Positions 8,117-29,924 of a stretch of 64,000 nt of DNA are shown here, one piece after another; position 1 is the first letter of the stretch; each line of letters starts with the position of its first letter. A program made the position numbers and the translations under genes. The notes beneath the pieces are model-generated. The model was not told where the DNA came from and made no database searches. It saw only the letters and a program-made list of their open reading frames with translations. Location: positions 124,001-188,000 of the IMG/VR virus record IMGVR_UViG_3300017917_001342; one strand, given 5' to 3'.

Positions 8117-8168
8117 TTTTGTTCTTTGAAACGGTTAGCGAAAACAGATAAAACAATTCTGTTTTCAT

Positions 8169-15732: not shown

Positions 15733-15876
15733 AAAGTTATTTATTACCTATAAACCATAGCGTTTGGACGCACAACCATTGGGTATAGTGTAGTCACTAA
15801 GTGGGGCACTTGTGCCGAACAGGGTTCGCGCCTGTTCTTTTTTTCAAAAAAACTGCATTTATTTTAAAAAATGCTG

Positions 15877-15943
15877 TTGACCATGCTGGCAAGAACAGCT
15901 ATGTTATGTGAGTAAGCAAAACAGCTTACACGCTCTTTGACAA
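15877..15943 (+). promoter_or_regulatory. sigma70 promoter + hairpin + rrn-type boxA leader (unit A)
   Basis: TTGACC-17-TATGTT; GTAAGC/GCTTAC; CGCTCTTTGACAA. Confidence 0.6.
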
Positions 15944-15949
15944 GATAGA

Positions 15950-16386
15950 AAACACAATAGACTTGGTAGTGTGAGGAACACGTAAACCCAAGTTGCGTAA
16001 CGTGTGCTGTTACTACCGCGCGGTTCGGGATACTGTAAAGTATTACTCGTATTGCTAATTGTAGCAGCACACACTAAACAGAAACTGGTAGCTATAGCAT
16101 ATTGTTAATGCGCTATGATATCAGAGGAAGACAGTGTGGCGGCTGTCCAGAGCACTAGCTCTGCAAGCACAAATCAGCTAACATGTGTACTGATACTGGA
16201 GAAACCTGTCGATTCAGGTCAATGGCTGTTTCTGTTTTTACTTGCAACCTGCCTATGTGGAATTGCGTGATAATCTGCTGCGTCAGGCCTGAAGGGACAA
16301 TTCCCGCGGCGCAATGGAAGAGCCACATTAGTCAAAACGTTGAGATTGTATCAAGATGCGAGTGGGTTGCAACTAAAAACAGAAAA
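15950..16386 (+). ncRNA. large structured ncRNA, unit A
   Basis: no credible ORF; long stems 16076-16085/16228-16237 and 16229-16249/16365-16385. Confidence 0.5.
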
Positions 16387-16390
16387 GGCA

Positions 16391-16459
16391 TTGACGTAGT
16401 AAATACGCGATGCTACATTAACTACGTAGACGGTAAACAGTTTACAGGTTCTTTGACAA
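16391..16459 (+). promoter_or_regulatory. sigma70 promoter + hairpin + boxA leader (unit B)
   Basis: TTGACG-17-TACATT; GTAAA/TTTAC; GGTTCTTTGACAA. Confidence 0.6.
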
Positions 16460-16469
16460 TTAGGGAATA

Positions 16470-16575
16470 CTAACAGTTGCGGTTGGGGCACAAGTGGTTG
16501 GCCTGAATCCATAAAACTCCTTGGGTGATGCCTGTCGGGAGCAAGCTGAGTTCGAATCTCAGACGCAACTGTTAG
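16470..16575 (+). ncRNA. tRNA-like core on a 12-bp stem, no CCA
   Basis: CTAACAGTTGCG/CGCAACTGTTAG; CTGAG-TTCGAAT-CTCAG. Confidence 0.55.
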
Positions 16576-16584
16576 TTAATAAAC

Positions 16585-16704
16585 AGCAACGCAAGTCTGT
16601 GTAATGCTAAGAGATCGGGGTTCAAATCCCCGGATTGCGGGGAAACCAGGCGAACTAGCTTAACTGGTAAAAGCGATTAGCGTAACAGGTATGCTTGCGT
16701 TGCT
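16585..16704 (+). ncRNA. circularly permuted tRNA-like module 1 (YrlA-type topology)
   Basis: long stem, then GAGAT, T arm, GAAA-capped acceptor-like stem, TAGCTT-AACTGGTA-AAAGC D arm, back into stem. Confidence 0.7.
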
Positions 16705-16712
16705 TTGATAAT

Positions 16713-16829
16713 ACAGGGTGTTGTTTGAATAACACTTGCCGGTGTCACGGGTTCGAGTCCCGTTCGGTCCATTGCGGGTCGATAGCTCAGTTGGTAGAGC
16801 ATGGTGAGAGTATCAAACATTCATCCTGT
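16713..16829 (+). ncRNA. circularly permuted tRNA-like module 2 (YrlA-type topology)
   Basis: GTGTC, ACGGG-TTCGAGT-CCCGT, TCGGTCC-ATTGC-GGGTCGA, TAGCTCAGTTGGTAGAGC. Confidence 0.75.
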
Positions 16830-17376
16830 TGTAAACGACATGGGCCCGAACTAAGTATCGGATAATAAAATAAAAAGGCCATAAGCGCAGCAGCGCAACG
16901 TCTTAAGTGACCATTTGTAGCAGCCTAGGCTACACCGAGGCACATGTTAACTAGCGCAGGGTGACGAACCCGTAAGACGCAAGAATATTGGTACTGCTAC
17001 TTGAAATGCAGCTAAGTCGCTCGAATACGAGAGTAGAGCCACACGCAGGAGGGTCCAACTGAAAGAGAAGGCGCTACCAAGTACACCATCAACTAAGTTG
17101 AATGTTTGTGCGACTTTAGGTAGAGATGCTACCCAGCAGAGTTTGCAAATCTAATGAGCTCGCACTGAAATTGGAATACGGTGTTAAAAGTTGCAATACT
17201 GATTCAAACGTATTAGTATACCCATCTTAATACGTTGGTGTTAATGGCTTGTGGGTAACGGTAACTTAACTTAGCAATAGGTTAGACGCGGAGGGACTAT
17301 CAGCGAAAGCTTGCATACCCATAGATGTGATGCCGGGCTGGCAGGGAGGAATGAGACTCCCACTTTGATAGATTTT

Positions 17377-17453
17377 GGGGGATTAGCTCAATTGGTTAGA
17401 GCGCCGGACTCATAATCCGTAGGTTGCTGGTTCGAGTCCTGCATTCCCTACCA
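17377..17453 (+). tRNA. tRNA-Met(CAT)
   Basis: CGGA-CTCATAA-TCCG. Confidence 0.9.
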
Positions 17454-17476
17454 TGTTTTATTAGTTGGAGAACAAT

Positions 17477-17647
17477 ATGAAAGTTGAAGCAAAAACACTT
17501 GTTGAATTGAAACAAAAAATTCGCAACAAAATGAAATGGCCAGACCGACGTACATGGACTCAACAAGAAACTGAAGAATTTAACTCTAAGTTTACAATTG
17601 AAATGGATCGCGATAGATCCGTATTTTTTGTTAAACCAAAAGAATAA
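17477..17647 (+). CDS. small hypothetical protein
   Basis: GGAG RBS. Confidence 0.55.
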   Translation: MKVEAKTLVELKQKIRNKMKWPDRRTWTQQETEEFNSKFTIEMDRDRSVFFVKPKE

Positions 17648-17650
17648 CAC

Positions 17651-18153
17651 GCCTGCTAGTCAAGAGTAGAAAAGCAATGAGACTAGTAGGTCCTTAGCGG
17701 GATAAACAAAGTAACCTGTGGCGCAGTGCTTGCGAGCATGGATGAAACGTAAGTGTTTAGACTATAACTGATATGCATCTCCTCCTTCCCCGCTAGCTAG
17801 GACGGGTTGGTTGTAGATCTGATGCTGATCGAATGGTTCGAATCCTGGGAGAGCACTGCATATCAGTTTAAATTCTGTTTTCACATGTACTATGTTCTGG
17901 GAACACTTTAACCAGGGTTAGAGTGCTGGGTTCGATTCCCGGGCGGGTTAAATGGGGGTTCGAGTCCCTCAGTAGTACAGTTGAAAGCAGAATTTGCAAT
18001 TCGGTTTCTACCTGCATTAGACAGTGTAAAGGTGCATATACTTTGGGCGAACGTAGTAAGATAGGATGAAGTACAAGTCCCGTATCTGCTAGTAGTTTTT
18101 GGACAAGGTGGGGCCAGTTCGAATCTGGCACTGATGCAGTTAGAAACAGAATT
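17651..18153 (+). ncRNA. ~500-nt structured RNA with several T-loop hairpins
   Basis: long stems at 17766/17857, 17871/17988, 17998/18141; GGTTCGA hairpins at 17926, 17954, 18113. Confidence 0.5.
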
Positions 18154-18155
18154 TT

Positions 18156-18234
18156 TGCGGGGTAGAGAAGTCTGGTCGTTCTCGCCGGGCTCATAACTCG
18201 GAGATCAGTGGTTCAAATCCACTCCCCGCAACCA
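18156..18234 (+). tRNA. tRNA-Met(CAT), initiator-like
   Basis: TGCGGGGTAGAG..., CCGGG-CTCATAA-CTCGG, AACCA. Confidence 0.85.
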
Positions 18235-18573
18235 ATATTATGAGTGTGTAACCCGCGGAGGGTTGAAGATACAAGAAGCTGTTGTATCGAGCGAGGTCAT
18301 TCTTCAGCGCAGACTCACCAATTATAACTAAATGCGGATAGCACCGCTTGCATACTGAGTAAGTATTAGCACGCCGCATATATCCCACCAGAGTGTCGGT
18401 AAACCACGGTAAGGGGAAGGTGCTTGAAGACATTGTATTACGTGTGGCAAATACTAGAGTATTACCTACTCCCACTTATCAGGGAATTACCTGCGCTGTA
18501 CATCTTAGATGATAACGGTTGCAAACACGATAAGACGTAATATAATTAAAACACTTATATAGGATATAATCCA

Positions 18574-18882
18574 ATGATTAAATCAATTATCGTTGTAGCA
18601 TTGCTTGCTGTTGCACCATTGTCTGCAAATGCAAACGAGTTAACAGCAGAACAAGAAAATTTTTGCATTAATATCGGTAAATTATCTGCTATGACTGCAA
18701 CACTTCGTGATACAGGACTCAGTGCATCTGATGTTTTTGGACTGTTATCCGATAAAGGTTTAAACGATAAACTTGCATTTATGGTAGTTAATATTGCATA
18801 TGAAAAAATGCCATATGCTTCACCTGATGCAGTTGCTGGTGTTACTCGCATTGCATGTGTGCAAGCTGTTAAAGAACAATAA
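18574..18882 (+). CDS. secreted hypothetical protein
   Basis: signal peptide ending ANA. Confidence 0.7.
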   Translation: MIKSIIVVALLAVAPLSANANELTAEQENFCINIGKLSAMTATLRDTGLSASDVFGLLSDKGLNDKLAFMVVNIAYEKMPYASPDAVAGVTRIACVQAVKEQ

Positions 18883-18889
18883 CAATTTC

Positions 18890-18966
18890 GGTGCCGTAGT
18901 TCAGATGGTTAGAACGCCTGGCTCATAACTAGGAGGTCGTTGGTTCGATTCCAACCGGCACTACCA
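18890..18966 (+). tRNA. tRNA(CAT), Met or Ile2
   Basis: CCTGG-CTCATAA-CTAGG. Confidence 0.88.
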
Positions 18967-19003
18967 AATAAATATCAAACACTAACACTGCATCGGAGAA
19001 ATT

Positions 19004-19222
19004 GTGTATACTGCAATAATAATGATGTGTTCTATGGATTTGCAGTGTTATACCATTGCAACTGACACTGGATATTTTGAAACCTATGCACAGTGTAAAC
19101 AAGCGATAAAAGAATTGATAACCGGCGAAGATTTTCAAACTACATACATGATTGAAAACGGTGAATACGTTTACTACGTGTACGGCGAACGATGTATAAA
19201 TTGGAATGACGTTGACGTTTAA
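19004..19222 (+). CDS. small Cys-containing hypothetical protein
   Basis: GGAG RBS. Confidence 0.5.
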   Translation: MYTAIIMMCSMDLQCYTIATDTGYFETYAQCKQAIKELITGEDFQTTYMIENGEYVYYVYGERCINWNDVDV

Positions 19223-19281
19223 AATATTTTTTGATATTGCATATATCAGAGATAAGTACTAACATAGTAAAGAGATAGCGT

Positions 19282-19356
19282 TCCCTAGTAGCTCAGGGGC
19301 AGAGCAGCTGACTGTTAATCAGCGGGTCGGTGGTTCGAAACCATCCTGGGGAGCCA
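19282..19356 (+). tRNA. tRNA-Asn(GTT)
   Basis: GCTGA-CTGTTAA-TCAGC. Confidence 0.93.
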
Positions 19357-19729
19357 AAATTTTCAAAAGGCAGTATAGTTTGCACGGATGAGTGTACCAA
19401 TGCAAATCAAACGCTTTGCGTTTTGAATGTTGTAAGTCGCCACATCGAGGTCGGGAAAATAGATGCTTTATATAGGGCCTTGCGGGGCGCTTATGTAGAC
19501 AACCTCTATTTGTAACCTTGGGAACCCGGATACTGAAAAGTGGATGCATACACGTTCCTTTTGATTTTGAATGGTCCGGAATCGCCTCTTAACAATGCGC
19601 ACCATTTATAGCAGGGATTTACCTGTGAACCCCGAGGACGCTCGGGACTACGGACATCCCGGGGTAATAAGCCCCATTTTATTATAAAATTTACACATAT
19701 ATCAAGTATAATTACTTGTAAAATATAGT

Positions 19730-20971
19730 GTGATAATGGATCAATTTTTTCAAAAAACTGTAGGTAGCAATTTTGCATGCGGCTATAAATGGGCATGGAG
19801 TACCATACGGTTACAGACTAGAACAACAAATAGTTGTCATAGAACCGATCAAGACATTATCACACCAGAAACATTTGATTCATTTCATAACACACCAATT
19901 AAATTGCAAACTCGCAAAGCCATGTTAAATGGACAATGGCCGGGTCACGGTTGCGAGTACTGTAAACACATAGAAGATTCTGGTGGCATCAGTGATCGCA
20001 TGTATGCTAATGAACATATACACAACGCTTACATACCTCATGAACTAATAACTAATCCAAAATCGTTAAAAACTACACCCACTATGGTTGAGGTGTATTT
20101 TAGTAATCTTTGCAATATGAGTTGCATTTACTGTAATGAATCATTTAGCACAGTTTGGGAACAAGAAAAACTCAAACACAACGAGCCGATTGCATCTAAT
20201 TTACTGTCGATTAGTTCTGTCGATTACAAAAAAATGACAGACGCATTTTTTACTTGGTTAGATAAAAATATCTATTCGATATTTGAGCTAAACATTTTGG
20301 GCGGCGAACCATTCTTTCAACCAGAACTTGATAGAATGTTAGCATTTATAGAAACGCACCCAAATCCAGATCTAACACTTAAAATATTTTCTAACTTAAA
20401 AGTTCCTACACAAAAGTTTTCTACTATTCTACGTAAATTAGATAGTTTTATCGAATGTAATATAGTCAAACAAGTTGAAATAATAACCAGTATAGACTGT
20501 TGGGGGCCGGAACAAGAATACATACGTACAGGAATTTCTCTTCGTCAATGGGAAGAGAATTTTTCGTACATGGTAAAAAATCATCAAAATATTAACATAC
20601 GAACCCACGGTACCATCACCTGTCTTACCATTAAGACTATATATGGCTTAATTGAAAAAATTAACTTTTACAATAGTTTCAGATCTAACTCTGAGATAAT
20701 TTATTCGTCCGATTTGCTAGTAGAACCAGAGTTCTTACAGTCGGGTATATTCCCATCGGGTTTTTTCGACGATGATTTTGCTGCTATTTTACAAATAGTA
20801 CAAGAAGATTATACAAAAGAGAAAATAACCAATCATTGGTTATCTGTAAACAATCATCAGTATAAACCAGAACTTATTTCAAAACTAAAAGCATTTTTAA
20901 CAACACTTGATATCAGACGCAACACCAACTGGAAATCTACATTTAAATGGCTAGATGAGTTTCAAGTGTAA
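19730..20971 (+). CDS. radical SAM protein (twitch/SPASM-type N-terminus), paralog 1
   Basis: NLCNMSCIYC, GGEPFF, N-terminal C..KW / SCH / CEYC. Confidence 0.88.
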   Translation: MIMDQFFQKTVGSNFACGYKWAWSTIRLQTRTTNSCHRTDQDIITPETFDSFHNTPIKLQTRKAMLNGQWPGHGCEYCKHIEDSGGISDRMYANEHIHNAYIPHELITNPKSLKTTPTMVEVYFSNLCNMSCIYCNESFSTVWEQEKLKHNEPIASNLLSISSVDYKKMTDAFFTWLDKNIYSIFELNILGGEPFFQPELDRMLAFIETHPNPDLTLKIFSNLKVPTQKFSTILRKLDSFIECNIVKQVEIITSIDCWGPEQEYIRTGISLRQWEENFSYMVKNHQNINIRTHGTITCLTIKTIYGLIEKINFYNSFRSNSEIIYSSDLLVEPEFLQSGIFPSGFFDDDFAAILQIVQEDYTKEKITNHWLSVNNHQYKPELISKLKAFLTTLDIRRNTNWKSTFKWLDEFQV

Positions 20972-20973
20972 AC

Positions 20974-22209
20974 ATGGAAAATATGTTTGAAAAATTAACA
21001 GGTTATCGTGCCGGATGTGCAGCTAAATGGAATTGGAGCACAGTTTTTTTAAACCAAGGCACAACTGCTAGCTGCCACAGAACCGATACTGATACTGTAG
21101 ATCATATATCTATACACAATTTTCATAATACCCCGCTAAAGTTGAAAACACGTCAACTGATGCAGCAAGGACAATGGCCAGGGCATGGGTGTGAGTATTG
21201 TAAACATATAGAAAACTCCGGTGGTATCAGCGACAGAATGAATTCAAATTCTCTGTTTAATGGCAAAAAGATTCCGCACGAATTGCTTGTTAATACAGAT
21301 GCAATACACACAACGCCCACGGTACTAGAAATAAATTTTACCAATTTATGTAACATGAGTTGTATATATTGCAGCGAAGGATGGAGTTCTGTATGGGAAC
21401 AGGAAAATATCAAATTCAATGATCGCATTGAACAAGCCCCTAGACTATTAAAAGGCGCAGAGTACGAAAGAATCCTGTTTGAATTCTTTCAATGGTTAGA
21501 CACAAACGTCGAACATTTGTCAGACCTACACATATTAGGTGGGGAACCATTTATTATGCCAGAATTTGACAAAACCGTCGAGTTTCTAAAAACACGCAAG
21601 TTGCCAGATTTGAATTTGGTAGTAATTACCAATTTGAAAATAACCAGAGACAAGCTAACTCAACACCTGTCGGTATTGAATTCGCTATTAGACAACAATG
21701 CCATTGGATCTGTAAGAATAGTTGCTAGTTTAGATTGTTGGGGACCGGAACAAGAGTATATACGTACTGGATTGTCCTTGCAGCAATGGGAAGACAACTT
21801 TGCATTTATAGTAAAAAACTATCGTAACATAGACATCAATGTACACAGTACAATCACAGGTCTTTCTATAAAGACCACCGACAGTTTAATAGACAAAATC
21901 AACTATTACAGGACATTGCTAGATAACAATAAAAACATTATTCATTCTAAGAATTTTGTTACAGGCTTTAGTTACTTGAGTCCAAAAATTTACCCTTATG
22001 GTTTTTTTGATAGCGATTTTGAAAAAATATTGACCAAAATAACTGATAGTTATGAGCTAGAAGAAATGAAAGGCTATAAATTATCAATTGATAACGAGCC
22101 ATATAACCCAGCTCTAATAGAAGATTTAAAACGATATCTAGATAAATTGGATTTTAGAAGAAACACAAATTGGCGTAACTATTTTTCATGGTTAGACGAG
22201 TTTAATTAA
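20974..22209 (+). CDS. radical SAM protein, paralog 2
   Basis: NLCNMSCIYC, GGEPF. Confidence 0.88.
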   Translation: MENMFEKLTGYRAGCAAKWNWSTVFLNQGTTASCHRTDTDTVDHISIHNFHNTPLKLKTRQLMQQGQWPGHGCEYCKHIENSGGISDRMNSNSLFNGKKIPHELLVNTDAIHTTPTVLEINFTNLCNMSCIYCSEGWSSVWEQENIKFNDRIEQAPRLLKGAEYERILFEFFQWLDTNVEHLSDLHILGGEPFIMPEFDKTVEFLKTRKLPDLNLVVITNLKITRDKLTQHLSVLNSLLDNNAIGSVRIVASLDCWGPEQEYIRTGLSLQQWEDNFAFIVKNYRNIDINVHSTITGLSIKTTDSLIDKINYYRTLLDNNKNIIHSKNFVTGFSYLSPKIYPYGFFDSDFEKILTKITDSYELEEMKGYKLSIDNEPYNPALIEDLKRYLDKLDFRRNTNWRNYFSWLDEFN

Positions 22210-22210
22210 A

Positions 22211-23461
22211 ATGGAAGATCAGTTTTCAAAACTCACCAATGGAAAATTTGGATGTGGTTACAAATGGGCATGGAGCACAATTTTTTTACAGCAAGGGTCT
22301 AGCTCTAGTTGTCATCGTACTATGCAGGACTTTTTTGATGAACAAACTGTGCAACAGTTTCATAACTCTCCATTGAAGCTGCAAAGTCGTAAAGCCATGT
22401 TAGATGGTCAATGGCCGGGGCATGGTTGTGAATACTGCAAAAATATAGAGGCTGCTGGCGGTATTAGTGATAGACAACAAATAAACAAAAAATTTCAAGG
22501 TCTTATTGTACCTAAAGAACTGTTAACTGATTCTACTGCAATCAATGTATCGCCTACTATGATTGAATTGCATTTTAGTAATTTGTGTAATATGAGTTGC
22601 ATATATTGTAACCAACGATTCAGTTCGGTATGGGAACAAGAAAATTTAAAGCACGGCAACATATTTGCAGATACCGAATTTCTATTAAATCACAGTGCAA
22701 CCGGTCGTATGATAGATTCATTTTTTGATTGGCTGCACTACAATATAGGCAATTTAGTTAAAATTAACATACTTGGTGGTGAACCATTTTATCAATCTGA
22801 GTTTTATAGATTTATAGATTTCTTAGCCGAGCATCCAAATCCAAATTTAGACATTACTGTGTTTTCTAATTTAAAAGTTAATGAAAATAAATTTTCATCG
22901 GCATTGAAACGATTAGAAACTTTTGTAAAATCCAACATTGTCAAAAGTGTAGAAATAGTTGCTAGTTTAGATTGTTGGGGACCTGAACAAGAATACGTTA
23001 GAACTGGGCTGTCTTTACAACAATGGGAAGATAATTTTGCACTGTTGGTAAACAATTTTCAAGATATTGAAGTACAAATTCATGGCACAATATCAAGTTT
23101 GACTATTAAAACTATCCCAGATCTACTCAACAAGATTAATTTTTACAATAGTATGCGTAGTAAACACCCAATAAGTTACTCTAATAACATACTAGTGCAT
23201 CCAAATTGCTTACAACCTGGTATATTTCCTTTGGGGTTTTTTGATGATGATTTCAACAAAATACTGCCTCTTATACAAAATCAAGCAGAACACGATGAAA
23301 TGCAAGGCTATTTCAAAACCATTAACAATACAGACTACAATCCTCAATTGATAATTGAATTGAAACAATACCTAGACACGTTGGATATCAGACGACACAC
23401 AAATTGGAAAACAGTGTTTCCATGGTTAGATCAGTTCGATGTTGACAAACATCACAGTTAG
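22211..23461 (+). CDS. radical SAM protein, paralog 3
   Basis: NLCNMSCIYC, GGEPFY. Confidence 0.88.
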   Translation: MEDQFSKLTNGKFGCGYKWAWSTIFLQQGSSSSCHRTMQDFFDEQTVQQFHNSPLKLQSRKAMLDGQWPGHGCEYCKNIEAAGGISDRQQINKKFQGLIVPKELLTDSTAINVSPTMIELHFSNLCNMSCIYCNQRFSSVWEQENLKHGNIFADTEFLLNHSATGRMIDSFFDWLHYNIGNLVKINILGGEPFYQSEFYRFIDFLAEHPNPNLDITVFSNLKVNENKFSSALKRLETFVKSNIVKSVEIVASLDCWGPEQEYVRTGLSLQQWEDNFALLVNNFQDIEVQIHGTISSLTIKTIPDLLNKINFYNSMRSKHPISYSNNILVHPNCLQPGIFPLGFFDDDFNKILPLIQNQAEHDEMQGYFKTINNTDYNPQLIIELKQYLDTLDIRRHTNWKTVFPWLDQFDVDKHHS

Positions 23462-23491
23462 TGATAGTATCACTGTAGAAAGGGCTGTGTT

Positions 23492-23971
23492 ATGAATGAC
23501 GATTATTACAAGTTGCGAGCAGAAGCTGTAACACGAGAACATATTCAACGTGTAGCAGAGCTACTTGGCAAATGTGCAACAGAATTAATTGCTCGTGGAG
23601 TAAACCACGACAAATCTAAACTAGAAGATCCGGAATTGCCAATTCTAGCAACTGTACAAGAAATTGTTGATAAAAATGGCTATTCTGAATATGGATCACC
23701 AGAATACTACGAAGTAATGCGTATTCTAAAACCTATGCATGAACATCATTATGCAAACAATAGGCATCATCCCGAATATTACCCAGATGGTGTAAACGGA
23801 ATGACACTGTTCGACCTTATTGAAATGTTTATAGATTGGAAAGCTGCTAGTGATCGCGCAAATGATCCACTAATGCACATTAGTCATTCTACAAAACGCT
23901 ACGGTATCGACACACAACTAGCTACGATACTGCGTAACACTGCTGATTATTTAGATTTTAAACACAACTGA
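23492..23971 (+). CDS. DUF5662-like HD-type protein
   Basis: HDKSK, HHYANNRHHPEYY, DLIEMFIDW. Confidence 0.7.
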   Translation: MNDDYYKLRAEAVTREHIQRVAELLGKCATELIARGVNHDKSKLEDPELPILATVQEIVDKNGYSEYGSPEYYEVMRILKPMHEHHYANNRHHPEYYPDGVNGMTLFDLIEMFIDWKAASDRANDPLMHISHSTKRYGIDTQLATILRNTADYLDFKHN

Positions 23972-24056
23972 AACAACTTGATTTTTTCCTAAGTGTGTGT
24001 TAAATATATAAAGTGCGGTATAGATCCGTACTACACACACAGAGAAAGTTATTAAA

Positions 24057-24380
24057 ATGAATACACCAGATTATCAAAAAATGGCCAATGATGTTGCAGA
24101 AACTGTAAAAGCTGCATTGGTTCCTGAAATTAAATTCAGCAAAAACGGCTATGAAATCCGTAGCGACATTCTCAAAGAAGCCAAGGACTTGGTTGCTCAA
24201 GACTTCCACATGAAATGGCAAGGTTGGGAACTTACTGCGAAACGTGACGAAAAAACTGGTCAAATTGTTACAGCAGTTGGCATGCCTGAGTTTCCAGGAC
24301 TTGATAAGGTTCTAGAAACTGCTGAAAAAATGTACGAGTTTGTTAACTACGGCAAGCGCCGCGAAGATAACAAAAAGTAA
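24057..24380 (+). CDS. hypothetical phage protein
   Basis: SKNGYEIRSDIL motif; terminator hairpin follows. Confidence 0.7.
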   Translation: MNTPDYQKMANDVAETVKAALVPEIKFSKNGYEIRSDILKEAKDLVAQDFHMKWQGWELTAKRDEKTGQIVTAVGMPEFPGLDKVLETAEKMYEFVNYGKRREDNKK

Positions 24381-24426
24381 TATCAACTGTAGTGGGCGTA
24401 ACTGCCCACTACACTTTAACAAATTT

Positions 24427-24446
24427 GGTTCCTTAGCTCAGCTGGA
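24427..24446 (+). pseudogene. 5' fragment of a disrupted tRNA-Arg
   Basis: GGTTCCTTAGCTCAGCTGGA; its acceptor strand pairs with AGGGACC of the fragment at 24915-24957. Confidence 0.7.
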
Positions 24447-24463
24447 ACAGGAAAACATATGCT

Positions 24464-24540
24464 GGTTCCGTAGCTCAGTTGGATAGAGCAGGGAACTTCT
24501 AATTCCAAGGTCGAGGGTTCGAATCCTTCCGGGACCGCCA
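24464..24540 (+). tRNA. tRNA-Arg(TCT)
   Basis: GGAA-CTTCTAA-TTCC, GCCA. Confidence 0.92.
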
Positions 24541-24586
24541 TATGTTTTCCATTGGTTAGAGATAAATACTCTAACCAGGAGCAATA

Positions 24587-24919
24587 ATGACATCATTCAC
24601 TTGTAGAACATGCGGCATAGAAGGTGAAGAAAACTTCTATAAAACTGCAAAGTATCAATGCAAGAAGTGCTGGAATCAGCGCACTTACAAAACAGGCATT
24701 GACAAGATCAATAAACTTAAATCTGAACTAGGCGGATGCTGTGCGCGATGCGGTTACGATAAGTATCTAGGCGCACTTGAGTTCCACCATTTGGATCCCA
24801 CAGTAAAAGAATTTGCACTAGGACACAAGAGGGGGCTGTCTGAAGAAGCACTTCGAAAAGAGATTAACAAGTGCATCCTACTGTGTGCGAACTGTCATAG
24901 AGAAGAACATCAAGTCTAA
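24587..24919 (+). mobile_element. HNH endonuclease inserted in a tRNA-Arg gene
   Basis: CARCGY..ALEFHH..LLCANCHREEH; stop codon lies in the TCTAA anticodon loop of the orphan 3' tRNA half. Confidence 0.8.
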
Positions 24920-24957
24920 GCAGTGGGTCGCAGGTTCGAGTCCTGCAGGGACCGCCA
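24915..24957 (+). pseudogene. 3' half of the disrupted tRNA-Arg(TCT)
   Basis: TCTAA-GCAGT-GGGTC-GCAGGTTCGAGTCCTGC-AGGGACC-GCCA. Confidence 0.75.
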
Positions 24958-25001
24958 TTTTAATTGACACAGTACAAGTTCTGTGCTATAAATAAGTTAA
25001 T

Positions 25002-25076
25002 GCGGGTGTAACTCAGAGGTAGAGTGTCAGCCTTCCAAGCTGTTCGTCGTGGGTTCGATTCCCATCGCCCGCTCCA
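25002..25076 (+). tRNA. tRNA-Gly(TCC)
   Basis: CAGC-CTTCCAA-GCTG. Confidence 0.92.
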
Positions 25077-25082
25077 AATTAC

Positions 25083-25157
25083 AGACTGTTAGTTCATTAG
25101 TAGAACGCTTGCGTGACATGCAAGAGGTAGTGGGAGCGTAACCCACACAGTCTACCA
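25083..25157 (+). tRNA. tRNA-Val(GAC), non-canonical T loop
   Basis: CTTGC-GTGACAT-GCAAG; T loop AGCGTAA. Confidence 0.75.
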
Positions 25158-25167
25158 GATAGAAAAC

Positions 25168-25839
25168 ATGTTCACATATCAACACATACGTAACGAAGTT
25201 AAACGACGCTGTAAAGCACAGCCGGCAACAATGATAGTGCCATGGGTATTAGATTATATCAATGCACACTTAGCAACACTGCCACCTAACAGTGTTATAG
25301 CAGAACTAGGTACATTTGTTGGTGGTACAGCAGTTTTATTTGCACAATCGCATCCATCGTTTGTGATACACACATATGATATAAACAAGTTTGACAATTT
25401 TGCCAACAGTTCAATGCTACAGTCATTAGATAAACGATACGACCTGCCATTGCTTAACAAAGATGATATTGTTGAAATTCAACGGTTGCATTTAGAAGAC
25501 TACCCTAATATAGTAATGCATGTTGAAGATTCGGCTAAGATCACAGTTGATAATTTATCAGCAGTACTAATAGACGATAATCGAGACGAGCACTCACTAT
25601 TTGAGTTGTTACACACTATTTGGCCGTTGTTGAATGATAACGGTATGATTTTTGCAGATGACGCAGATAATCCACATATACACAATGCGTTTTATAAATT
25701 TGCTAAAATCAAAGATTTAGAGTTGACAATATACAGTAAATGCATTAAATTAGTAAAAACAGCAGCAATGTCGGACAAAAGACAGTTTGATTTTAAAGAC
25801 ACCCTGTTGCACAGAATAACAATAGGAGACCACGTATGA
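25168..25839 (+). CDS. class I SAM-dependent methyltransferase
   Basis: IAELGTFVGGT, YDI, VLIDD. Confidence 0.65.
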   Translation: MFTYQHIRNEVKRRCKAQPATMIVPWVLDYINAHLATLPPNSVIAELGTFVGGTAVLFAQSHPSFVIHTYDINKFDNFANSSMLQSLDKRYDLPLLNKDDIVEIQRLHLEDYPNIVMHVEDSAKITVDNLSAVLIDDNRDEHSLFELLHTIWPLLNDNGMIFADDADNPHIHNAFYKFAKIKDLELTIYSKCIKLVKTAAMSDKRQFDFKDTLLHRITIGDHV

Positions 25840-25949
25840 GAAAAGCAGTTCACAAAGCAAACGTTAAGCGTCAGGCGCTTATGCTCAAGCGTGGTTGGGT
25901 AGGTCGAAAGAATCGCAAGCAAAAGCGCATGGCTGTTGCTGCAAGTTAA
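25836..25949 (+). CDS. 37-aa basic peptide
   Basis: AGGAG RBS; MRKAVHKANVKRQALMLKRGWVGRKNRKQKRMAVAAS. Confidence 0.45.
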   Translation: MRKAVHKANVKRQALMLKRGWVGRKNRKQKRMAVAAS

Positions 25950-25956
25950 ATTATTT

Positions 25957-26032
25957 GGGGTGTTAGCTCAGCTGGGAGAGCGGTAGCTTTGCAAGCTTCA
26001 GGTCAGGAGTTCGATCCTCCTACACTCCACCA
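25957..26032 (+). tRNA. tRNA-Ala(TGC)
   Basis: cloverleaf, TTTGCAA loop. Confidence 0.93.
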
Positions 26033-26050
26033 AAATATAAGGATGATATC

Positions 26051-26233
26051 ATGTTTGGTTTTTTGAATTCGACTCTTAAAGCAGCAGCAGCCGTAGTTGA
26101 TATTCCTGTTTCTATTGCAGCCGATGTGGTTACACTTGGCGGAGCATTGACAGATAAAGATACACTGTATACTACAGATGCAGCAAGTCGACTGGTTCAA
26201 AATGTCAAGAACATGACCGATCCAAAGGAATAA
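26051..26233 (+). CDS. small hypothetical protein
   Basis: AAGGA RBS. Confidence 0.65.
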   Translation: MFGFLNSTLKAAAAVVDIPVSIAADVVTLGGALTDKDTLYTTDAASRLVQNVKNMTDPKE

Positions 26234-26234
26234 T

Positions 26235-26309
26235 GCGGAATTAGCTCAGTGGTAGAGCGTCTCGTTTACACCGAGAATGTCGGGAGTTCGAAACTCTCAT
26301 TCCGCACCA
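26235..26309 (+). tRNA. tRNA-Val(TAC)
   Basis: TCTCG-TTTACAC-CGAGA. Confidence 0.92.
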
Positions 26310-26317
26310 TAAACTAG

Positions 26318-26763
26318 TTATAGAACAACTGTTGCGCGGCGCCAATCGGCGAAAGGTTGGGCAGTTGTCATAGCAAAATAGATTTGAGCGATAGAATGTT
26401 ATGCGCGGTGCACTCTGAATGCAACAGGCGATAACAACATGGCAATAATCAAATACCGTTCGTAACGATAGAATGTTATGCGCGATGCCCTTAGAAGGTA
26501 GCAGGCGATAACAACATGGTGAGAACAACAATAGAACATGCGATTTTACTGAATAGACTGCATGTCATTGTAAATTAGAAAGCAGAATACAACATAGTTG
26601 TTGCTATAGAATGTATTCTTTTTATATTAAAATAGACTGCTAAACACTATAGAGCCTGTGTATCACTAACAAAACATTATCTAGTAAGCACAGGCCATAG
26701 ACAAGAAAACTGTTGCTAAACCTATAGAGTAGCTTTTCTTTTAGATAGAAAGGATGCCATAGG
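26318..26763 (+). repeat. array of six hairpins sharing an AGAR/(Y or A)C internal loop
   Basis: NNAT-AGAR-[stem-loop]-HC-ATNN at 26318, 26389, 26466, 26529, 26647, 26722. Confidence 0.65.
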
Positions 26764-26836
26764 AGGCAAAAATAAATTGCAAAATTATCGAATATTCTGC
26801 GTATGAATATCATAATTAGGCATAAATTAACTTAGT

Positions 26837-26912
26837 GCTGTCATAGCTCAGCTGGTAGAGCATCTGATTTGTAATCAGAGGGTCGGGAGTTCAAGTCTCT
26901 CTGGCAGCACCA
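26837..26912 (+). tRNA. tRNA-Thr(TGT)
   Basis: TCTGA-TTTGTAA-TCAGA. Confidence 0.93.
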
Positions 26913-26923
26913 TTCAATACAAT

Positions 26924-26998
26924 GTCGCGTTAGCAAAACGTTAATGCGCTGCCCCGCAAAGGTAGAGGACTGTGGTTAAATTCCCAGACGCGACTCCA
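26924..26998 (+). tRNA. tRNA-Cys(GCA), divergent
   Basis: GTCGCGT/ACGCGAC-TCCA, CTGCC-CCGCAAA-GGTAG; D loop lacks GG. Confidence 0.7.
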
Positions 26999-27005
26999 AT
27001 TCAAT

Positions 27006-27089
27006 GCGACTGTGGTGGAATGGTAGACACGCTAGCTTGAGGTGCTAGTGGCGCAAGCCGTGGAAGTTCGAATCTTCTCAGTCGCACCA
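27006..27089 (+). tRNA. tRNA-Leu(GAG)
   Basis: CTAGC-TTGAGGT-GCTAG. Confidence 0.93.
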
Positions 27090-27129
27090 AATATTTCTCA
27101 ATAGTAGTTTTTTCACAGTAAATATCTTT

Positions 27130-28251
27130 ATGGAAAACACTGATAAAGATTTTTATTGTGCAGCACCGTTTGTGAATAGATCGTACGATCCAAACGGTAA
27201 AGTTAAACCTTGTTGCGAATGGCACAACTTAGATACAACTGTCGACGATGAACAACAGTTGATTTCTCTACGATCTCAATTTTTACAAAACAAACCAAAT
27301 CCCTGTTGTAAAGTCTGTCATAAAACAGAAGCTGCTGGGGTACAATCTACTAGAAATGATTTTAACAACAGGTACGGTAGACCAACTGTACCTGTGCTGC
27401 GTCATTTGGATCTAAGTCTAGGCAATCTATGTAATTTCAAATGTAGAATGTGCAGCAGTTTTTTTAGCACAAAATGGGCCAGTGACGAACAAGCATTGGG
27501 ATTGATTCCACACAAGTTGTACAGACGTACCTGGGATGAATTGAAACATTTAGACATATCAAATGTAGATATGATCAAGTTCAAAGGTGGCGAGCCTTTT
27601 CTAGAACAAGAAACAATGATCAATACCCTAACTGCAATCTTATCTCAAAAAGGCTCGTTAGAAAATATTACAGTTGTTGTAAACACAAATGGATCTATAG
27701 AAATAGAACCAAGATTGATAGAGTTGTTGTCTCTTTGCAAAACTGTTAACTTAACAGTTAGTATAGATGGATACGGTAAAGTAAACGAATATCAACGCAC
27801 AGGCGCAGTATGGAATGTAATAGAAAAAAATCTATTAGATTTTCAAAAAAATCTCAACAATAACTTTGACTTATCTATATGGTCTGTGTGGACTATACTC
27901 AACATTACTAACTTAAAAACACTGTTAGGCTGGGTTACAACCAACTTGCCTAGATACAAAATCTATGGTACTACGCTGCATTTTCCAGAAGAGTTTGCTA
28001 TACGCAATATACCAGACCAACTAAAAACGCAATTTTTTAATGACATTAGCAATTGGTGTGAACTCGATCACAACGACGGTGTGCTAGAAAACAAATTACA
28101 GATTTTAAATGAGTTACAACAACAGCCTATAAAAACGATCAACGAAGTTAAATCTTACATAGATAGCCTTGACAAAGTTAGAAATGAGTCGTTTTCTTTA
28201 ATAGATCCTGTGATGTATGCGGCATTTTTTGAATCAACTGTTGACATATGA
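27130..28251 (+). CDS. radical SAM protein with twitch/SPASM domain
   Basis: CAAPF..PCC, NLCNFKCRMC, GGEPF. Confidence 0.88.
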   Translation: MENTDKDFYCAAPFVNRSYDPNGKVKPCCEWHNLDTTVDDEQQLISLRSQFLQNKPNPCCKVCHKTEAAGVQSTRNDFNNRYGRPTVPVLRHLDLSLGNLCNFKCRMCSSFFSTKWASDEQALGLIPHKLYRRTWDELKHLDISNVDMIKFKGGEPFLEQETMINTLTAILSQKGSLENITVVVNTNGSIEIEPRLIELLSLCKTVNLTVSIDGYGKVNEYQRTGAVWNVIEKNLLDFQKNLNNNFDLSIWSVWTILNITNLKTLLGWVTTNLPRYKIYGTTLHFPEEFAIRNIPDQLKTQFFNDISNWCELDHNDGVLENKLQILNELQQQPIKTINEVKSYIDSLDKVRNESFSLIDPVMYAAFFESTVDI

Positions 28252-28306
28252 TATAAGACCTATTATCTTCTACGCTAATCATTGACAACCCTTGTGAGGT
28301 GACATT

Positions 28307-28693
28307 ATGGCTAGCAAAACTGATATGCTTATTGCTAAAGCACTTAGCACCGATAGCGAAGATGAAGCTATTGCATGCCTTAAAATGGCACGTAAACAAG
28401 GTGCATCTCATACCGCAGTTTCTACTAACAAGTCAACTCAAGACTGGGAAGCACTTGCACGCAAGTATCATAAAATTGCCTATGAAAATCAAGAAGACCT
28501 TAAACGTACCAAAGCTGCATTGAAATCACTGATGGTTTCAAAAACCATACATGCTGCGTACAGCAGTCTACAAGAAAACGATGCTGCTAAACTGCGTAAA
28601 CAGTTGTCGGCAGCAAAGAATGAAACTTACAAATGGAAAATGGTAAGTTTTGGTATACTGTGTTTTTGTACTTTTTTAATGTTTTTGATTTAA
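28307..28693 (+). CDS. coiled-coil protein with C-terminal TM helix
   Basis: GAGG RBS; EAIACLKMARK N-terminus. Confidence 0.65.
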   Translation: MASKTDMLIAKALSTDSEDEAIACLKMARKQGASHTAVSTNKSTQDWEALARKYHKIAYENQEDLKRTKAALKSLMVSKTIHAAYSSLQENDAAKLRKQLSAAKNETYKWKMVSFGILCFCTFLMFLI

Positions 28694-28798
28694 TTTACTG
28701 TTGACAACGTTCAAGTAACACACTATATTAACAACATGAAGCAGCACAAATTGAGTTGAAAAACAAAAAAGTGCTGCTTCAAAAAAAATAAAAAACAG

Positions 28799-28868
28799 TT
28801 GACACGCTGTACGTAAGGTGTTAAAGTAACTGAGTAAACAACAAAACGGTTTACATGCTCTTTAAAAA
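28799..28868 (+). promoter_or_regulatory. sigma70 promoter + hairpin + boxA leader (unit C)
   Basis: TTGACA-17-TAAAGT; GTAAAC/GTTTAC; TGCTCTTTAAAAA. Confidence 0.65.
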
Positions 28869-28914
28869 TTTACATGTGGTCCTAGCGCAAGCGATAATGG
28901 ACAAGAAGCGAAAG

Positions 28915-29036
28915 TTTCTGTTTACACATATTGTAACTGCTTTAGGTAATAGCATTTCGGTAATGCGCACTTGCTTAATCGAGTGAGATACGGTTCGAGT
29001 CCGCACCAAGCAAATTACAATAGCTGTAAACAGAAA
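28915..29036 (+). ncRNA. tRNA-like cloverleaf at the tip of a long helix
   Basis: TTTCTGTTTACA/TGTAAACAGAAA; GCATT-TCGGT-AATGC; CACTTG/CGAGTG; CGG-TTCGAGT-CCG. Confidence 0.6.
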
Positions 29037-29039
29037 TTG

Positions 29040-29920: not shown

Positions 29921-29924
29921 GTTT

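What the first reader, a model, noticed from the sequence alone, without database searches (positions are those of the whole stretch)
15877..28868. Three non-coding units share an rRNA-operon-style leader: promoter, hairpin, boxA
At 15877, 16391 and 28799 a TTGAC(A/C/G)-17-TAnnnT promoter is followed by a GTAA(A/G)C...G(T/C)TTAC hairpin and then GCTCTTTGACAA, GTTCTTTGACAA or GCTCTTTAAAAA. A fourth boxA-like GTTCTTTGAAAC lies at 8121. Established: rrn boxA (TGCTCTTTAACA) recruits NusB/S10 antitermination and RNA-folding complexes. Each leader precedes long ORF-free structured sequence. This is independent evidence that these regions are stable-RNA operons using the host rRNA transcription machinery.
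Basis: partly seen in the sequence, partly recalled or inferred. Interest (0 to 1): 0.78.

Follow-up and report, generated by a model that had tools for sequence, protein, structure and literature searches.

The report
Ribosomal-style boxA leaders on phage RNA genes
A 518-kb freshwater phage puts the start signal that bacteria use for ribosomal RNA (strong promoter, small hairpin, boxA) in front of its own non-coding RNA genes, including the giant GOLLD RNA, most likely to borrow the host's Nus antitermination machinery.

Summary
The composite hairpin-NN-boxA motif occurs at 15912, 16433 and 28834, against 0 expected by chance, and nowhere else in the 518,643-bp phage genome. A fourth full copy with a different hairpin lies 1.8 kb left of the window.

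- **Conservation:** The same leader recurs in at least 10 other viral contigs inside tRNA arrays. The -35 and -10 elements and boxA are conserved, spacers vary, and the hairpin stem changes in compensatory ways.
- **Match to rrn leaders:** Two phage boxA variants share their 14-mer (L2) or 12-mer (L1) with boxA strings 197-211 nt upstream of 16S genes in Pseudomonadota. The promoter / hairpin / 2-nt gap / boxA layout matches E. coli and Shewanella rrn leaders.
- **What leader 3 drives:** GOLLD RNA (Rfam 234 bits). About half of 19 related GOLLD loci have such a leader.
- **Expression:** Metatranscriptome contigs cover only the GOLLD body, not the leader or flanking genes.
- **Phage genes:** No NusB, NusG, S10 or Rho, but an RpoD-like sigma factor.

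Best reading: host Nus-factor (rrn-type) antitermination and folding leaders co-opted for phage non-coding RNA operons. Function is inferred, not tested. Two hairpins are marginal and unit 2 is not fully ORF-free. No precedent was found in the searched literature.

The parts
8121..8132 (+). boxA-like GTTCTTTGAAAC without an upstream hairpin, 4 nt after the stop of a 63-aa L7/L12-CTD-like ORF (7925-8116) and ahead of tRNA-Gln/Lys. Possibly an internal boxA; weakest member.
   Evidence: The downstream hairpin is 84% identical over 37 nt to that of the left-flank leader. Not conserved in L004.
15817..15844 (+). Intrinsic-terminator-like hairpin plus T-run that closes the preceding unit just before leader 1.
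15846..15876 (+). A/T-rich, UP-element-like tract upstream of the -35 of leader 1. The same is seen upstream of L2, L3 and the homologous leaders.
15877..15905 (+). Leader 1 promoter, TTGACC-17-TATGTT.
   Evidence: The -35 TTGA is invariant, -10 T/A/T are 90-100% conserved and the spacer is free across 14 leaders.
15912..15929 (+). Leader 1 boxB-like hairpin, 6 bp with a 6-nt loop, -7.5 kcal/mol. It starts 6 nt after the -10, so it is probably the 5' end of the RNA.
   Evidence: Covariation.
15932..15943 (+). Leader 1 boxA, GCTCTTTGACAA.
   Evidence: The first 12 nt of the 14-mer GCTCTTTGACAATT found 211 nt upstream of 16S in L097 are identical. Single-stranded in predicted folds.
15944..16390 (+). 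Unit 1: 447-nt structured non-coding RNA of unknown class. No Rfam match and no homolog in the related loci.
   Evidence: Fold z = -3.93, 0 of 100 shuffles as stable. Rfam, blast. Only short ORFs without family matches.
16391..16419 (+). Leader 2 promoter, TTGACG-17-TACATT, with TG before the -10.
16433..16445 (+). Leader 2 hairpin remnant, GTAAAC A GTTTAC. Only 5 bp with a 3-nt loop is possible, -0.8 kcal/mol.
16448..16459 (+). Leader 2 boxA, GTTCTTTGACAA.
   Evidence: The 14-mer GTTCTTTGACAATT is identical to an rrn-leader boxA 197 nt upstream of 16S in L099.
16460..19356 (+). Unit 2. About 900 nt of tRNA-like modules, including a sub-threshold YrlA-like match at 16722-16822. Then tRNA-Met x3 (17377, 18156, 18890) and tRNA-Asn (19282), with at least one small real ORF (18574-18882).
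28701..28729 (+). Second, upstream promoter TTGACA-17-TATATT (11 of 12 consensus positions), 98 bp before the leader 3 promoter. A tandem arrangement as in rrn P1/P2.
   Evidence: The E. coli comparison is.
28799..28827 (+). Leader 3 promoter, TTGACA-17-TAAAGT, with TG before the -10 and preceded by an A-tract.
28834..28854 (+). Leader 3 hairpin, GTAAAC / 9-nt loop / GTTTAC. Weak: it competes with an alternative fold.
28857..28868 (+). Leader 3 boxA, GCTCTTTAAAAA. With its flanks it matches the E. coli rrnB TGCTCTTTAACAATTTA at 16 of 17 positions, and it is a perfect match to the published consensus GYTCTTTAANA.
28879..28902 (+). Third leader element: GNRA-capped hairpin with a UA / GAUAAU internal loop, at the position where rrn leaders have boxC.
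   Evidence: Seven copies, all 26-55 nt after a boxA. Unique in the 518-kb genome. Both helices covary.
28869..29080 (+). Non-conserved spacer between boxA and the GOLLD body, including a long hairpin with a tRNA-like insert. Behaves as a removable leader.
   Evidence: No similarity to relatives before about 29081. No RNA-run contigs here. Fold z = -3.8.
29081..29920 (+). GOLLD RNA body, about 840 nt. The 5' domain is 88-90% identical to relatives. The 3' domain is the Rfam match at 29462-29918.
   Evidence: Rfam RF02032, 234.1 bits against a gathering score of 150. Alignment. RNA-run contigs at depths of tens to about 1000 cover roughly 29097-29871 only.
29527..29600 (+). tRNA-Arg(TCT) nested in the GOLLD linker.
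   Evidence: The literature notes tRNAs in the GOLLD linker.

Best explanation
These are rrn-type processive-antitermination leaders that a huge phage uses for its own non-coding RNA operons.

Proposed mechanism, step by step:
1. Host core RNA polymerase, carrying host sigma-70 or the phage's own RpoD-like sigma, starts at a strong TTGAC-17-TAnnnT promoter with an A-rich UP-like tract.
2. The first 20 or so nucleotides form a small 5'-terminal hairpin, equivalent in position to boxB. This may also protect the 5' end.
3. Two nucleotides later the single-stranded boxA (GYTCTTTRAMAA) emerges and is bound by host NusB-S10.
4. Together with NusG, NusA and SuhB, this converts the elongation complex into the Rho-resistant, fast, RNA-chaperoning form normally reserved for rRNA.
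5. That lets the polymerase run through long, untranslated, highly structured RNA: a 447-nt unknown RNA, a tRNA-like/tRNA-Met cluster, a tRNA array, and the roughly 840-nt GOLLD RNA.
6. The leader and a variable spacer are then trimmed off, as in pre-rRNA.

Shown: the presence, conservation, strand specificity and geometry of the elements; identity of the boxA strings to those in real rrn leaders; that leader 3 precedes GOLLD; that the GOLLD body accumulates as RNA; and that the phage lacks its own Nus factors.

Inferred: the transcription start, Nus binding, antitermination or chaperoning, and leader removal.
For: Non-random and unique:
- 3 composite motifs against 0 expected, only 3 in 518 kb, plus a fourth copy with another hairpin.

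Conserved in other phages:
- 10 of 11 viral-contig hits are true leaders inside tRNA arrays.
- The generic hairpin+boxA scan finds more, with hairpins such as CATAAGCA/TGTTTATG, GTAAC/GTTAC and AAGACGA/TCGTCTT.

Promoter footprint:
- -35 TTGA invariant, -10 T/A/T 90-100% conserved, 17-nt spacer free, A-rich tract upstream.

RNA-level hairpin:
- Compensatory G-C to A-T and A-T to T-A changes, and a G-C / G.T / A-T series where G.T pairs only as sense-strand RNA.
- Loop lengths from 2 to 13 nt argue against a DNA operator.

Strand bias and enrichment:
- 30 boxA cores against 2 for the reversed-pattern control in 293 kb. 26 lie on the RNA-sense strand once L009 is oriented by its leader.

Same layout as real rrn leaders:
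- E. coli rrnB P2 / boxB / ACT / GCTCTTTAACAATTTA.
- Shewanella promoter / TGACC-GGTCA / AC / boxA, 228 nt before 16S.
- B. subtilis rrn is described as a 5' hairpin immediately followed by the boxA-like AUGAUCUUUGAAA (PMC13753749).
- The G8 variants occur in rrn leaders 95-211 nt upstream of 16S in Pseudomonadota.
- L3 fits the functional consensus GYTCTTTAANA (PMC5725501).

Other points:
- boxA is predicted single-stranded in most copies.
- About 10 of 19 GOLLD loci have such a leader 170-540 nt upstream of the 5'-domain anchor.
- RNA-run contigs cover the GOLLD body only.
- No phage NusB, NusG, S10 or Rho.
- There is a precedent for boxA protecting long untranslated arrays: CRISPR operons and suhB are cited in PMC13753749, and PMC5725501 states explicitly that non-coding RNAs were not surveyed.
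Against: - No functional test of any step was possible. Complex prediction does not score protein-RNA jobs.
- The host is unknown, so its own boxA and Rho status cannot be checked.
- About half of the related GOLLD loci have a promoter without boxA, or sit directly after tRNAs. The leader is therefore dispensable for GOLLD as such.
- The L2 and L3 hairpins are marginal, and the L3 minimum-energy fold can sequester the first 4 nt of boxA.
- No GU-rich boxC was found.
- The lack of RNA coverage over the leader may reflect divergence among the strains that supplied the contigs rather than processing. Contigs cannot map 5' ends.
- The stem sequence GTAAGC/GTTTAC is more conserved than pairing alone would require, which hints at an extra, sequence-specific role.
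Confidence: 0.68

Rival explanations
1. The leader is a phage-specific regulatory module. The conserved hairpin stem (GTAAGC/GTTTAC), with or without the boxA-like string, is recognised by a phage-encoded factor such as an N-like antiterminator or a processing or stabilising protein. Host NusB-S10 plays a secondary role or none.
For: - The stem sequence is conserved beyond what pairing needs, across paralogous leaders and across phages.
- The exact hairpin is absent from cellular rrn leaders.
- A third phage-specific conserved hairpin follows boxA in 7 leaders.
- Lambdoid phages set the precedent of combining boxA with a phage protein bound to a hairpin (own knowledge; lambdoid role of Nus factors noted in PMC5725501).
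Against: - Loops differ in length and sequence even within this one genome: GT, AAAACA, CAG, and a 9-nt loop. N-type recognition is loop-specific.
- Other leaders use unrelated stems, such as GTTAGCA/TGCTAAC, CATAAGCA/TGTTTATG and AAGACGA/TCGTCTT.
- The order is hairpin then boxA, as in rrn, not boxA then boxB as in nut.
- The boxA strings are full rrn-type strings, identical to cellular ones.
Confidence: 0.12
2. The shared leader is only a strong-promoter cassette with a 5'-terminal stabilising hairpin, spread by duplication together with tRNA and ncRNA cassettes. The boxA-like string is an inherited passenger with no Nus-dependent function.
For: - The four copies in this genome and those in relatives are clearly homologous.
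- tRNA arrays evolve by duplication and carry homing endonucleases (HNH; a GIY-YIG-like ORF read by eye).
- Half of the GOLLD loci do without boxA.
Against: - boxA is the best conserved block of the leader, with 11 invariant columns, while the adjacent spacers, loops and downstream sequence diverge freely.
- It survives when the hairpin is replaced by an unrelated one.
- It shows a strong sense-strand bias and roughly 15-fold enrichment over a reversed-pattern control.
Confidence: 0.12
3. boxA acts negatively here, as it does in the suhB 5' UTR. Nus-complex assembly would attenuate or time expression of the phage RNAs rather than protect them.
For: BoxA-dependent repression of suhB is documented (PMC5725501).
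Against: - In suhB the effect is on a translated gene, whereas these units are untranslated RNAs.
- The GOLLD body is highly abundant in RNA libraries.
- The layout matches rrn and CRISPR-type protective leaders.
Confidence: 0.05

Closest known systems
Bacterial rrn operon leader (boxB-boxA-boxC; NusB/S10/NusG/NusA/SuhB antitermination complex), e.g. E. coli rrnB P2 leader
   Same: - sigma-70 promoter, in one case a tandem pair.
- A-rich upstream tract.
- Short hairpin, a 2-3 nt gap, then boxA.
- L3 matches TGCTCTTTAACAATTTA at 16 of 17 positions.
- The G8 variants match boxA strings in rrn leaders of Pseudomonadota: identical 14-mer for L2, 12-mer for L1.
- The leader lies upstream of a long structured RNA and appears not to be retained in the stable product.
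   Different: - No rRNA downstream. The cargo is phage tRNA arrays, tRNA-like RNAs, an unknown 447-nt RNA and GOLLD.
- No GU-rich boxC; some leaders have a different GNRA-capped hairpin in its place.
- The hairpin sequence is phage-specific.
- It is encoded by a virus that lacks Nus factors.
B. subtilis rrn leaders (5'-terminal small hairpin immediately followed by boxA-like AUGAUCUUUGAAA; PMC13753749)
   Same: - The hairpin sits at the very 5' end and boxA follows directly.
- G at boxA position 8 (CUUUGAAA), as in three of the four phage copies.
   Different: - The phage boxA starts with GCUC or GUUC, not GAUC.
- The promoter and sigma context points to Pseudomonadota rather than Firmicutes.
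boxA upstream of non-rRNA targets: CRISPR arrays and suhB (cited in PMC13753749; PMC5725501)
   Same: boxA placed at the start of a long untranslated, repetitive RNA array, presumably to stop Rho. This is the same logic proposed here for the tRNA and ncRNA arrays.
   Different: - Those are cellular loci.
- No phage-borne ncRNA operon with an rrn-type boxA was found in the literature searched.
Lambdoid phage nut sites (boxA + boxB + N protein)
   Same: A phage uses boxA and host Nus factors for processive antitermination.
   Different: - nut has boxA before boxB, a shortened boxA and a loop-specific N protein.
- Here the hairpin precedes a full rrn-type boxA, the loops are not conserved, and the targets are RNA genes rather than delayed-early mRNAs.
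GOLLD RNA (Rfam RF02032)
   Same: Unit 3 is a bona fide GOLLD: 234 bits, a nested tRNA, and a location in a phage tRNA island.
   Different: Earlier descriptions, as read here (PMC12286853), do not describe its natural promoter, leader or termination control. This locus and its relatives supply candidates for all three.

Membership tests
rrn-type boxA (Nus factor) antitermination leader | boxA matching the functional consensus (gamma-proteobacterial GYTCTTTAANA; E. coli UGCUCUUUAACA) | tested here: met
   L3 (GCTCTTTAAAA) is a perfect match. L1, L2 and the left-flank copy differ only at position 8 (G). Strings with that G occur 95-211 nt upstream of 16S genes in Pseudomonadota genomes: the L2 14-mer and the L1 12-mer are identical to them, and the left-flank copy differs at one position. 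B. subtilis rrn boxA also has this G.
rrn-type boxA (Nus factor) antitermination leader | Located in the transcribed leader just downstream of a promoter, on the sense strand | tested here: met
   boxA starts 27-46 nt after the -10 in the four copies of this genome. The promoter footprint is conserved. There is a sense-strand bias. The transcription start itself has not been mapped.
rrn-type boxA (Nus factor) antitermination leader | boxB-like hairpin immediately upstream of boxA | tested here: met
   - Stable, with compensatory changes, in L1, the left-flank copy and most relatives: -7 to -12 kcal/mol.
- Marginal in L2 (-0.8) and weak in L3.
- The gap to boxA is 1-3 nt in all copies, against 3 nt in E. 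coli and 2 nt in Shewanella.
rrn-type boxA (Nus factor) antitermination leader | boxC (GU-rich) downstream of boxA | tested here: not met
   No conserved GU-rich element was seen. A different conserved GNRA-capped hairpin occupies that position in 7 leaders.
rrn-type boxA (Nus factor) antitermination leader | Binds NusB-S10 and confers Rho-resistant read-through | not testable with these tools
   Complex prediction returned no score for a protein-RNA job. This needs EMSA or ITC and terminator read-through reporters.
rRNA operon | 16S/23S/5S rRNA genes downstream of the leader | tested here: not met
   Rfam finds no rRNA gene in the window. The only LSU match is a 21-bit fragment. The leaders precede ncRNAs and tRNAs.
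Lambdoid nut site | Order boxA then boxB, with a conserved N-binding loop | tested here: not met
   The hairpin precedes boxA, and the loops vary in length and sequence.
GOLLD RNA (RF02032) | Covariance-model score above the curated gathering threshold | tested here: met
   234.1 bits against 150, full model 1-416. Relatives score 190-196 bits.
GOLLD RNA (RF02032) | Phage-encoded, in or beside a tRNA island, about 800 nt, with a variable 5' domain and a conserved 3' domain | tested here: met
   - Complete virus record with terminal repeats.
- 46 tRNAs in the window.
- Body of about 840 nt.
- Within this phage group the 5' domain is the more conserved part in sequence.

The most novel reading that the evidence does not exclude
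Huge phages recruit the host's rRNA-dedicated transcription and chaperone complex (boxA-NusB-S10-NusG-NusA-SuhB) to make their own ribosome-sized RNA machines. On this reading, GOLLD needs, or is strongly helped by, this complex for co-transcriptional folding and for assembly into its 14-mer nanocage. The leader-plus-spacer would be a pre-GOLLD segment processed off like a pre-rRNA leader. The multiple strong boxA leaders would also draw Nus factors away from host rrn operons during infection. A smaller variant of this reading is that the conserved stem and the GNRA-capped hairpin after boxA mark a new phage-specific accessory factor that modifies the Nus complex.
Probability: 0.25. Interest if true: 0.85.

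Novelty: new member of a known kind. Interest (0 to 1): 0.6.

Why it matters
- boxA/Nus antitermination has been treated as a device of rRNA operons, lambdoid early genes and, more recently, suhB and CRISPR arrays. Finding full rrn-style leaders on phage tRNA arrays and large ornate RNAs would extend it to virus-encoded non-coding RNA operons. The published boxA survey states that it did not consider that class.
- It gives the first concrete handle on how GOLLD is made in vivo: candidate promoters, a 5' boundary, a removable leader and a testable dependence on Nus factors. GOLLD has a solved 14-mer cage structure but unknown function and biogenesis.
- It offers a simple sequence rule, promoter / hairpin / boxA, for locating the starts of non-coding transcription units in huge-phage genomes.

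Tried and rejected
- **Close cultured relatives:** megablast and blastn of the region, of GOLLD and of a leader, and tblastn of the Sbt-like protein, against 50,697 phage records. Only a 63-nt tRNA match turned up.
- **Relatives through a neighbouring protein** (30797-32032): none.
- **Idea that the phage copied a host rrn leader wholesale:** rejected. The exact hairpin+boxA is at chance frequency in 596 Gb of cellular genomes and is never upstream of 16S.
- **NusB+S10+RNA complex prediction:** the tool does not score protein-RNA jobs, so this is no evidence either way.
- **Genuine Y RNA in unit 2:** unlikely. The YrlA score is 44.8 against a gathering score of 69, and there is no TROVE/Ro60 gene.
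- **Host identification:**
  - The Pseudomonadota pattern scan returns no taxon names.
  - Sbt-like protein neighbours and the RpoD-like sigma point only weakly to Pseudomonadota.
- **Universal GOLLD-boxA link:** rejected. About half of the related GOLLD loci lack boxA.
- **Alignment for covariation:** MAFFT could not register the 5' arm because loops vary, so pairs were tabulated by script instead of with the count of structure pairs.
- **Morgado et al. 2020** on GOLLD in Mycobacterium tRNA arrays is not held in the library.

Full report
**Context.** The window is bases 124001-188000 of a single 518,643-bp contig with 40.7% G+C. IMG/VR classes it as a complete virus record with direct terminal repeats. 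It carries 55 tRNA genes and a tmRNA. Forty-six of the tRNAs are in the window, all on the + strand. Rfam also finds a GOLLD RNA at 29462-29918 (234 bits against a gathering score of 150) and a skipping-rope RNA. So the finding lies in the non-coding RNA island of a huge freshwater phage. DNA runs that hold the sequence are pond, aquatic, freshwater and aquaculture metagenomes.

**Observation.**
- The composite pattern GTAARC-loop-GYTTAC-NN-GYTCTTTRAMAA gives 3 matches against 0.00 expected in shuffles. These are the only 3 in the whole genome.
- The boxA core alone is also over-represented in the window: 7 matches against 0.61 expected.
- A generic scan for any hairpin followed by a boxA core picks out four sites with the same geometry: a perfect 6-7 bp stem, a 2-nt gap, then boxA, all on the + strand within 31 kb.
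- The fourth site is 1.8 kb left of the window (boxA at genome 122176-122187). It has the same promoter type (TTGACA-17-TAAGTT) but a different stem, GTTAGCA/TGCTAAC.
- The 8121 site has boxA only. It lies 4 nt after the stop codon of a 63-aa ORF that passes the Pfam threshold for the L7/L12 C-terminal domain. It shares a downstream hairpin with the left-flank leader.

**Conservation.**
- The same pattern retrieves 11 viral contigs. Ten of them carry the whole leader, promoter included, inside tRNA arrays, and four of those also hold GOLLD.
- In 596 Gb of cellular genomes the pattern gives 55 hits, about my estimate of the chance expectation (~50). None is upstream of a 16S gene. The single hit with a promoter and downstream tRNAs is a 3-kb contig from a lake MAG that is nearly identical to the phage leaders, so it is probably a mis-binned phage fragment. 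The hairpin sequence is therefore a phage trait, not a copy of a host rrn leader.
- An alignment of 14 leaders shows an invariant -35 TTGA, 90-100% conservation of the T, A and final T of the -10, a freely varying 17-nt spacer, and an A-rich tract upstream. This promoter footprint matters because hexamer matches alone are not enriched in the region.
- Downstream, the 3' arm and boxA are the most conserved block.
- The stem keeps pairing through change. At the pair 3 nt before boxA there are 13 G-C and 3 A-T. At -5 there are 14 A-T and 1 T-A. At -7 there is a G-C / G.T / A-T series, and the G.T pairs only in sense-strand RNA.
- Other leaders use unrelated stems (CATAAGCA/TGTTTATG, GTAAC/GTTAC, AAGACGA/TCGTCTT) and loops of 2-13 nt. 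That is hard to reconcile with a DNA operator.
- Across 293 kb of these phage regions the boxA core occurs 30 times, against 2 for a reversed-pattern control. Twenty-six of the 30 lie on the RNA-sense strand once L009 is oriented by its leader.

**Comparison with real rrn leaders.**
- E. coli rrnB reads P2 -10, 11 nt, boxB hairpin, ACT, GCTCTTTAACAATTTA. Phage leader 3 reads -10, 6 nt, hairpin, AT, GCTCTTTAAAAATTTA, which is 16 of 17 identical across boxA and its flanks.
- A Shewanella rrn leader has a promoter, a 5-bp hairpin, AC and boxA, 228 nt before 16S.
- The position-8 G in three of the four phage copies is not in the gamma-proteobacterial consensus GYTCTTTAANA (PMC5725501).
- However, GCTCTTTGACAATT, GTTCTTTGACAATT and GTTCTTTGAAAATT lie 95-211 nt upstream of 16S genes in other Pseudomonadota genomes.
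- B. subtilis rrn operons are described as starting with a small 5' hairpin followed at once by AUGAUCUUUGAAA, which binds NusB (PMC13753749).
- Hairpin stabilities are -7.5 kcal/mol (L1), -7.2 (left-flank copy) and -7 to -12 (relatives). L2 reaches only -0.8, and L3 is weak with an alternative fold that can pair the first 4 nt of boxA.
- No GU-rich boxC is present. Instead, seven leaders including L3 (28879-28902) have a GNRA-capped hairpin with a UA/GAU(G/A)AU internal loop 26-55 nt after boxA. It is unique in the genome and covaries in both helices.

**What the leaders drive.**
- Leader 1 precedes a 447-nt RNA with no Rfam match and no homolog in the relatives. It folds far better than shuffles (z = -3.9), with the hairpin formed and boxA unpaired.
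- Leader 2 follows directly, with no terminator in between. It precedes about 900 nt of tRNA-like modules (a sub-threshold YrlA-like hit, no Ro60 gene), then three tRNA-Met and one tRNA-Asn. This stretch contains at least one real small ORF (phrog_2315).
- Leader 3, itself preceded 98 bp upstream by a second near-consensus promoter, is followed by a 210-nt non-conserved spacer and then the GOLLD body. The body becomes 88-90% identical to relatives from about 29081.
- In each related GOLLD locus first retrieved, a leader lies 565-600 nt before the Rfam match, as it does here.
- In a wider set of 19 GOLLD loci, about 10 have a promoter-hairpin-boxA leader, one of them with the variant GCTCTTTATAAA. 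Nine have a promoter without boxA or follow tRNAs directly. The leader is common but optional.

**Expression.**
- Contigs from four metatranscriptome runs cover about 29097-29871 at depths of tens to about 1000. They show nothing over 28718-29087 or over the downstream ORFs.
- So the GOLLD body accumulates as RNA, with boundaries that match the conserved body.
- The absence of the leader fits processing. It could also reflect divergence among the strains that supplied the contigs, and contigs cannot map 5' ends.
- Two RNA runs from the same study hold 14% of the sampled words of units 1-2.

**Whose machinery.** The phage has no detectable NusB, NusG, S10, Rho or canonical multisubunit RNA polymerase. 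It does encode a 501-aa RpoD-like sigma factor with regions 1.2, 2, 3 and 4. Elongation, and any boxA function, must therefore rely on host core polymerase and host Nus factors. Initiation may use the phage sigma. The host is unknown. The boxA type, the sigma's best model and the Sbt-like transporter's neighbours point weakly to Pseudomonadota.

**Interpretation.** The best-supported reading is that these are rrn-type Nus-factor leaders co-opted for phage non-coding RNA operons. They would protect long untranslated transcripts from Rho, speed elongation and perhaps chaperone folding, with the leader later trimmed away. The sequence, geometry, conservation and cargo are shown. Transcription start, Nus binding, antitermination and processing are inferred. 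The rivals are less well supported but not excluded: a phage-specific factor acting on the conserved stem, a passenger motif in a duplicated promoter cassette, and a negative suhB-like role.

**Novelty.** Full-text searches found no paper that links boxA with GOLLD, with jumbo or huge phages, or with phage tRNA arrays. The GOLLD cryo-EM paper does not discuss natural promoters or termination. The boxA survey states that it did not consider non-coding RNAs. I therefore file this as a new member of a known kind: a boxA/Nus leader in a new, viral, non-coding setting. It is not a new mechanism.

Noticed in passing
window 7925-8116 (+): A 63-aa ORF with a ribosomal L7/L12 C-terminal-domain match (PF00542, 26.3 bits against a cut-off of 25.9), embedded in the tRNA array. 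Its stop codon is 4 nt before the 8121 boxA-like site.
   Followed up: partly
window 28879-28902; also L003, L004, L005, L006, L011, L014: A conserved GNRA-capped hairpin with a UA / GAU(G/A)AU internal loop (possibly kink-turn-like), always 26-55 nt after a boxA. Unique in the 518-kb genome. Both helices covary.
   Followed up: partly
genome 102524-104029 (L100:709-2214), outside the window: A phage-encoded RpoD-like primary sigma factor of 501 aa, with regions 1.2, 2, 3 and 4 and a weak non-essential-region match. No canonical multisubunit RNA polymerase genes were detected.
   Followed up: partly
window 16477-16830: A string of tRNA-like modules (acceptor plus T-arm minihelices, one arranged like a permuted tRNA) that are not called as tRNAs. 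There is a sub-threshold YrlA (Y RNA-like) match at 16722-16822, but no Ro60/TROVE gene in the genome.
   Followed up: partly
window 15944-16390: A 447-nt strongly structured RNA (z = -3.9) with no Rfam family and no homolog in the related phage loci.
   Followed up: partly
L067:3790-4417 (genome 122790-123417): A 5' fragment of a tRNA-Met, followed by an ORF with a GIY-YIG-like N-terminus (read by eye) that runs into an intact tRNA-Met. This looks like a homing endonuclease inserted at a tRNA gene.
   Followed up: no
window 5519-5593: A tRNA with anticodon CTA (amber-suppressor type, labelled tRNA-Pyl by ARAGORN) within the array.
   Followed up: no
window 19730-23461 and 27130-28251: Four paralogous ORFs of about 370-416 aa with radical-SAM-like matches (two above and two just below the Pfam cut-offs), lying between the RNA units. 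DUF5662 is at 23492-23971 and an HNH endonuclease at 32032-32517.
   Followed up: no
window 11073-12017 and 37580-38545: Auxiliary membrane proteins inside the tRNA island: an Sbt_1 sodium-dependent bicarbonate-transporter family protein (366 bits) and a TerC family protein.
   Followed up: partly
window 39057-39173: A skipping-rope RNA (RF02924, 46.9 bits against 36.7).
   Followed up: no
L009:13359-13979 (-): Four boxA cores within about 600 nt on one strand of a related viral contig, the first with the full promoter-hairpin-boxA leader.
   Followed up: no
window 29081-29925 vs L004, L007, L011: Within this phage group the GOLLD 5' domain is nearly invariant in sequence, while the Rfam-modelled 3' domain is much more diverged. 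This is the opposite of the family-wide description.
   Followed up: partly
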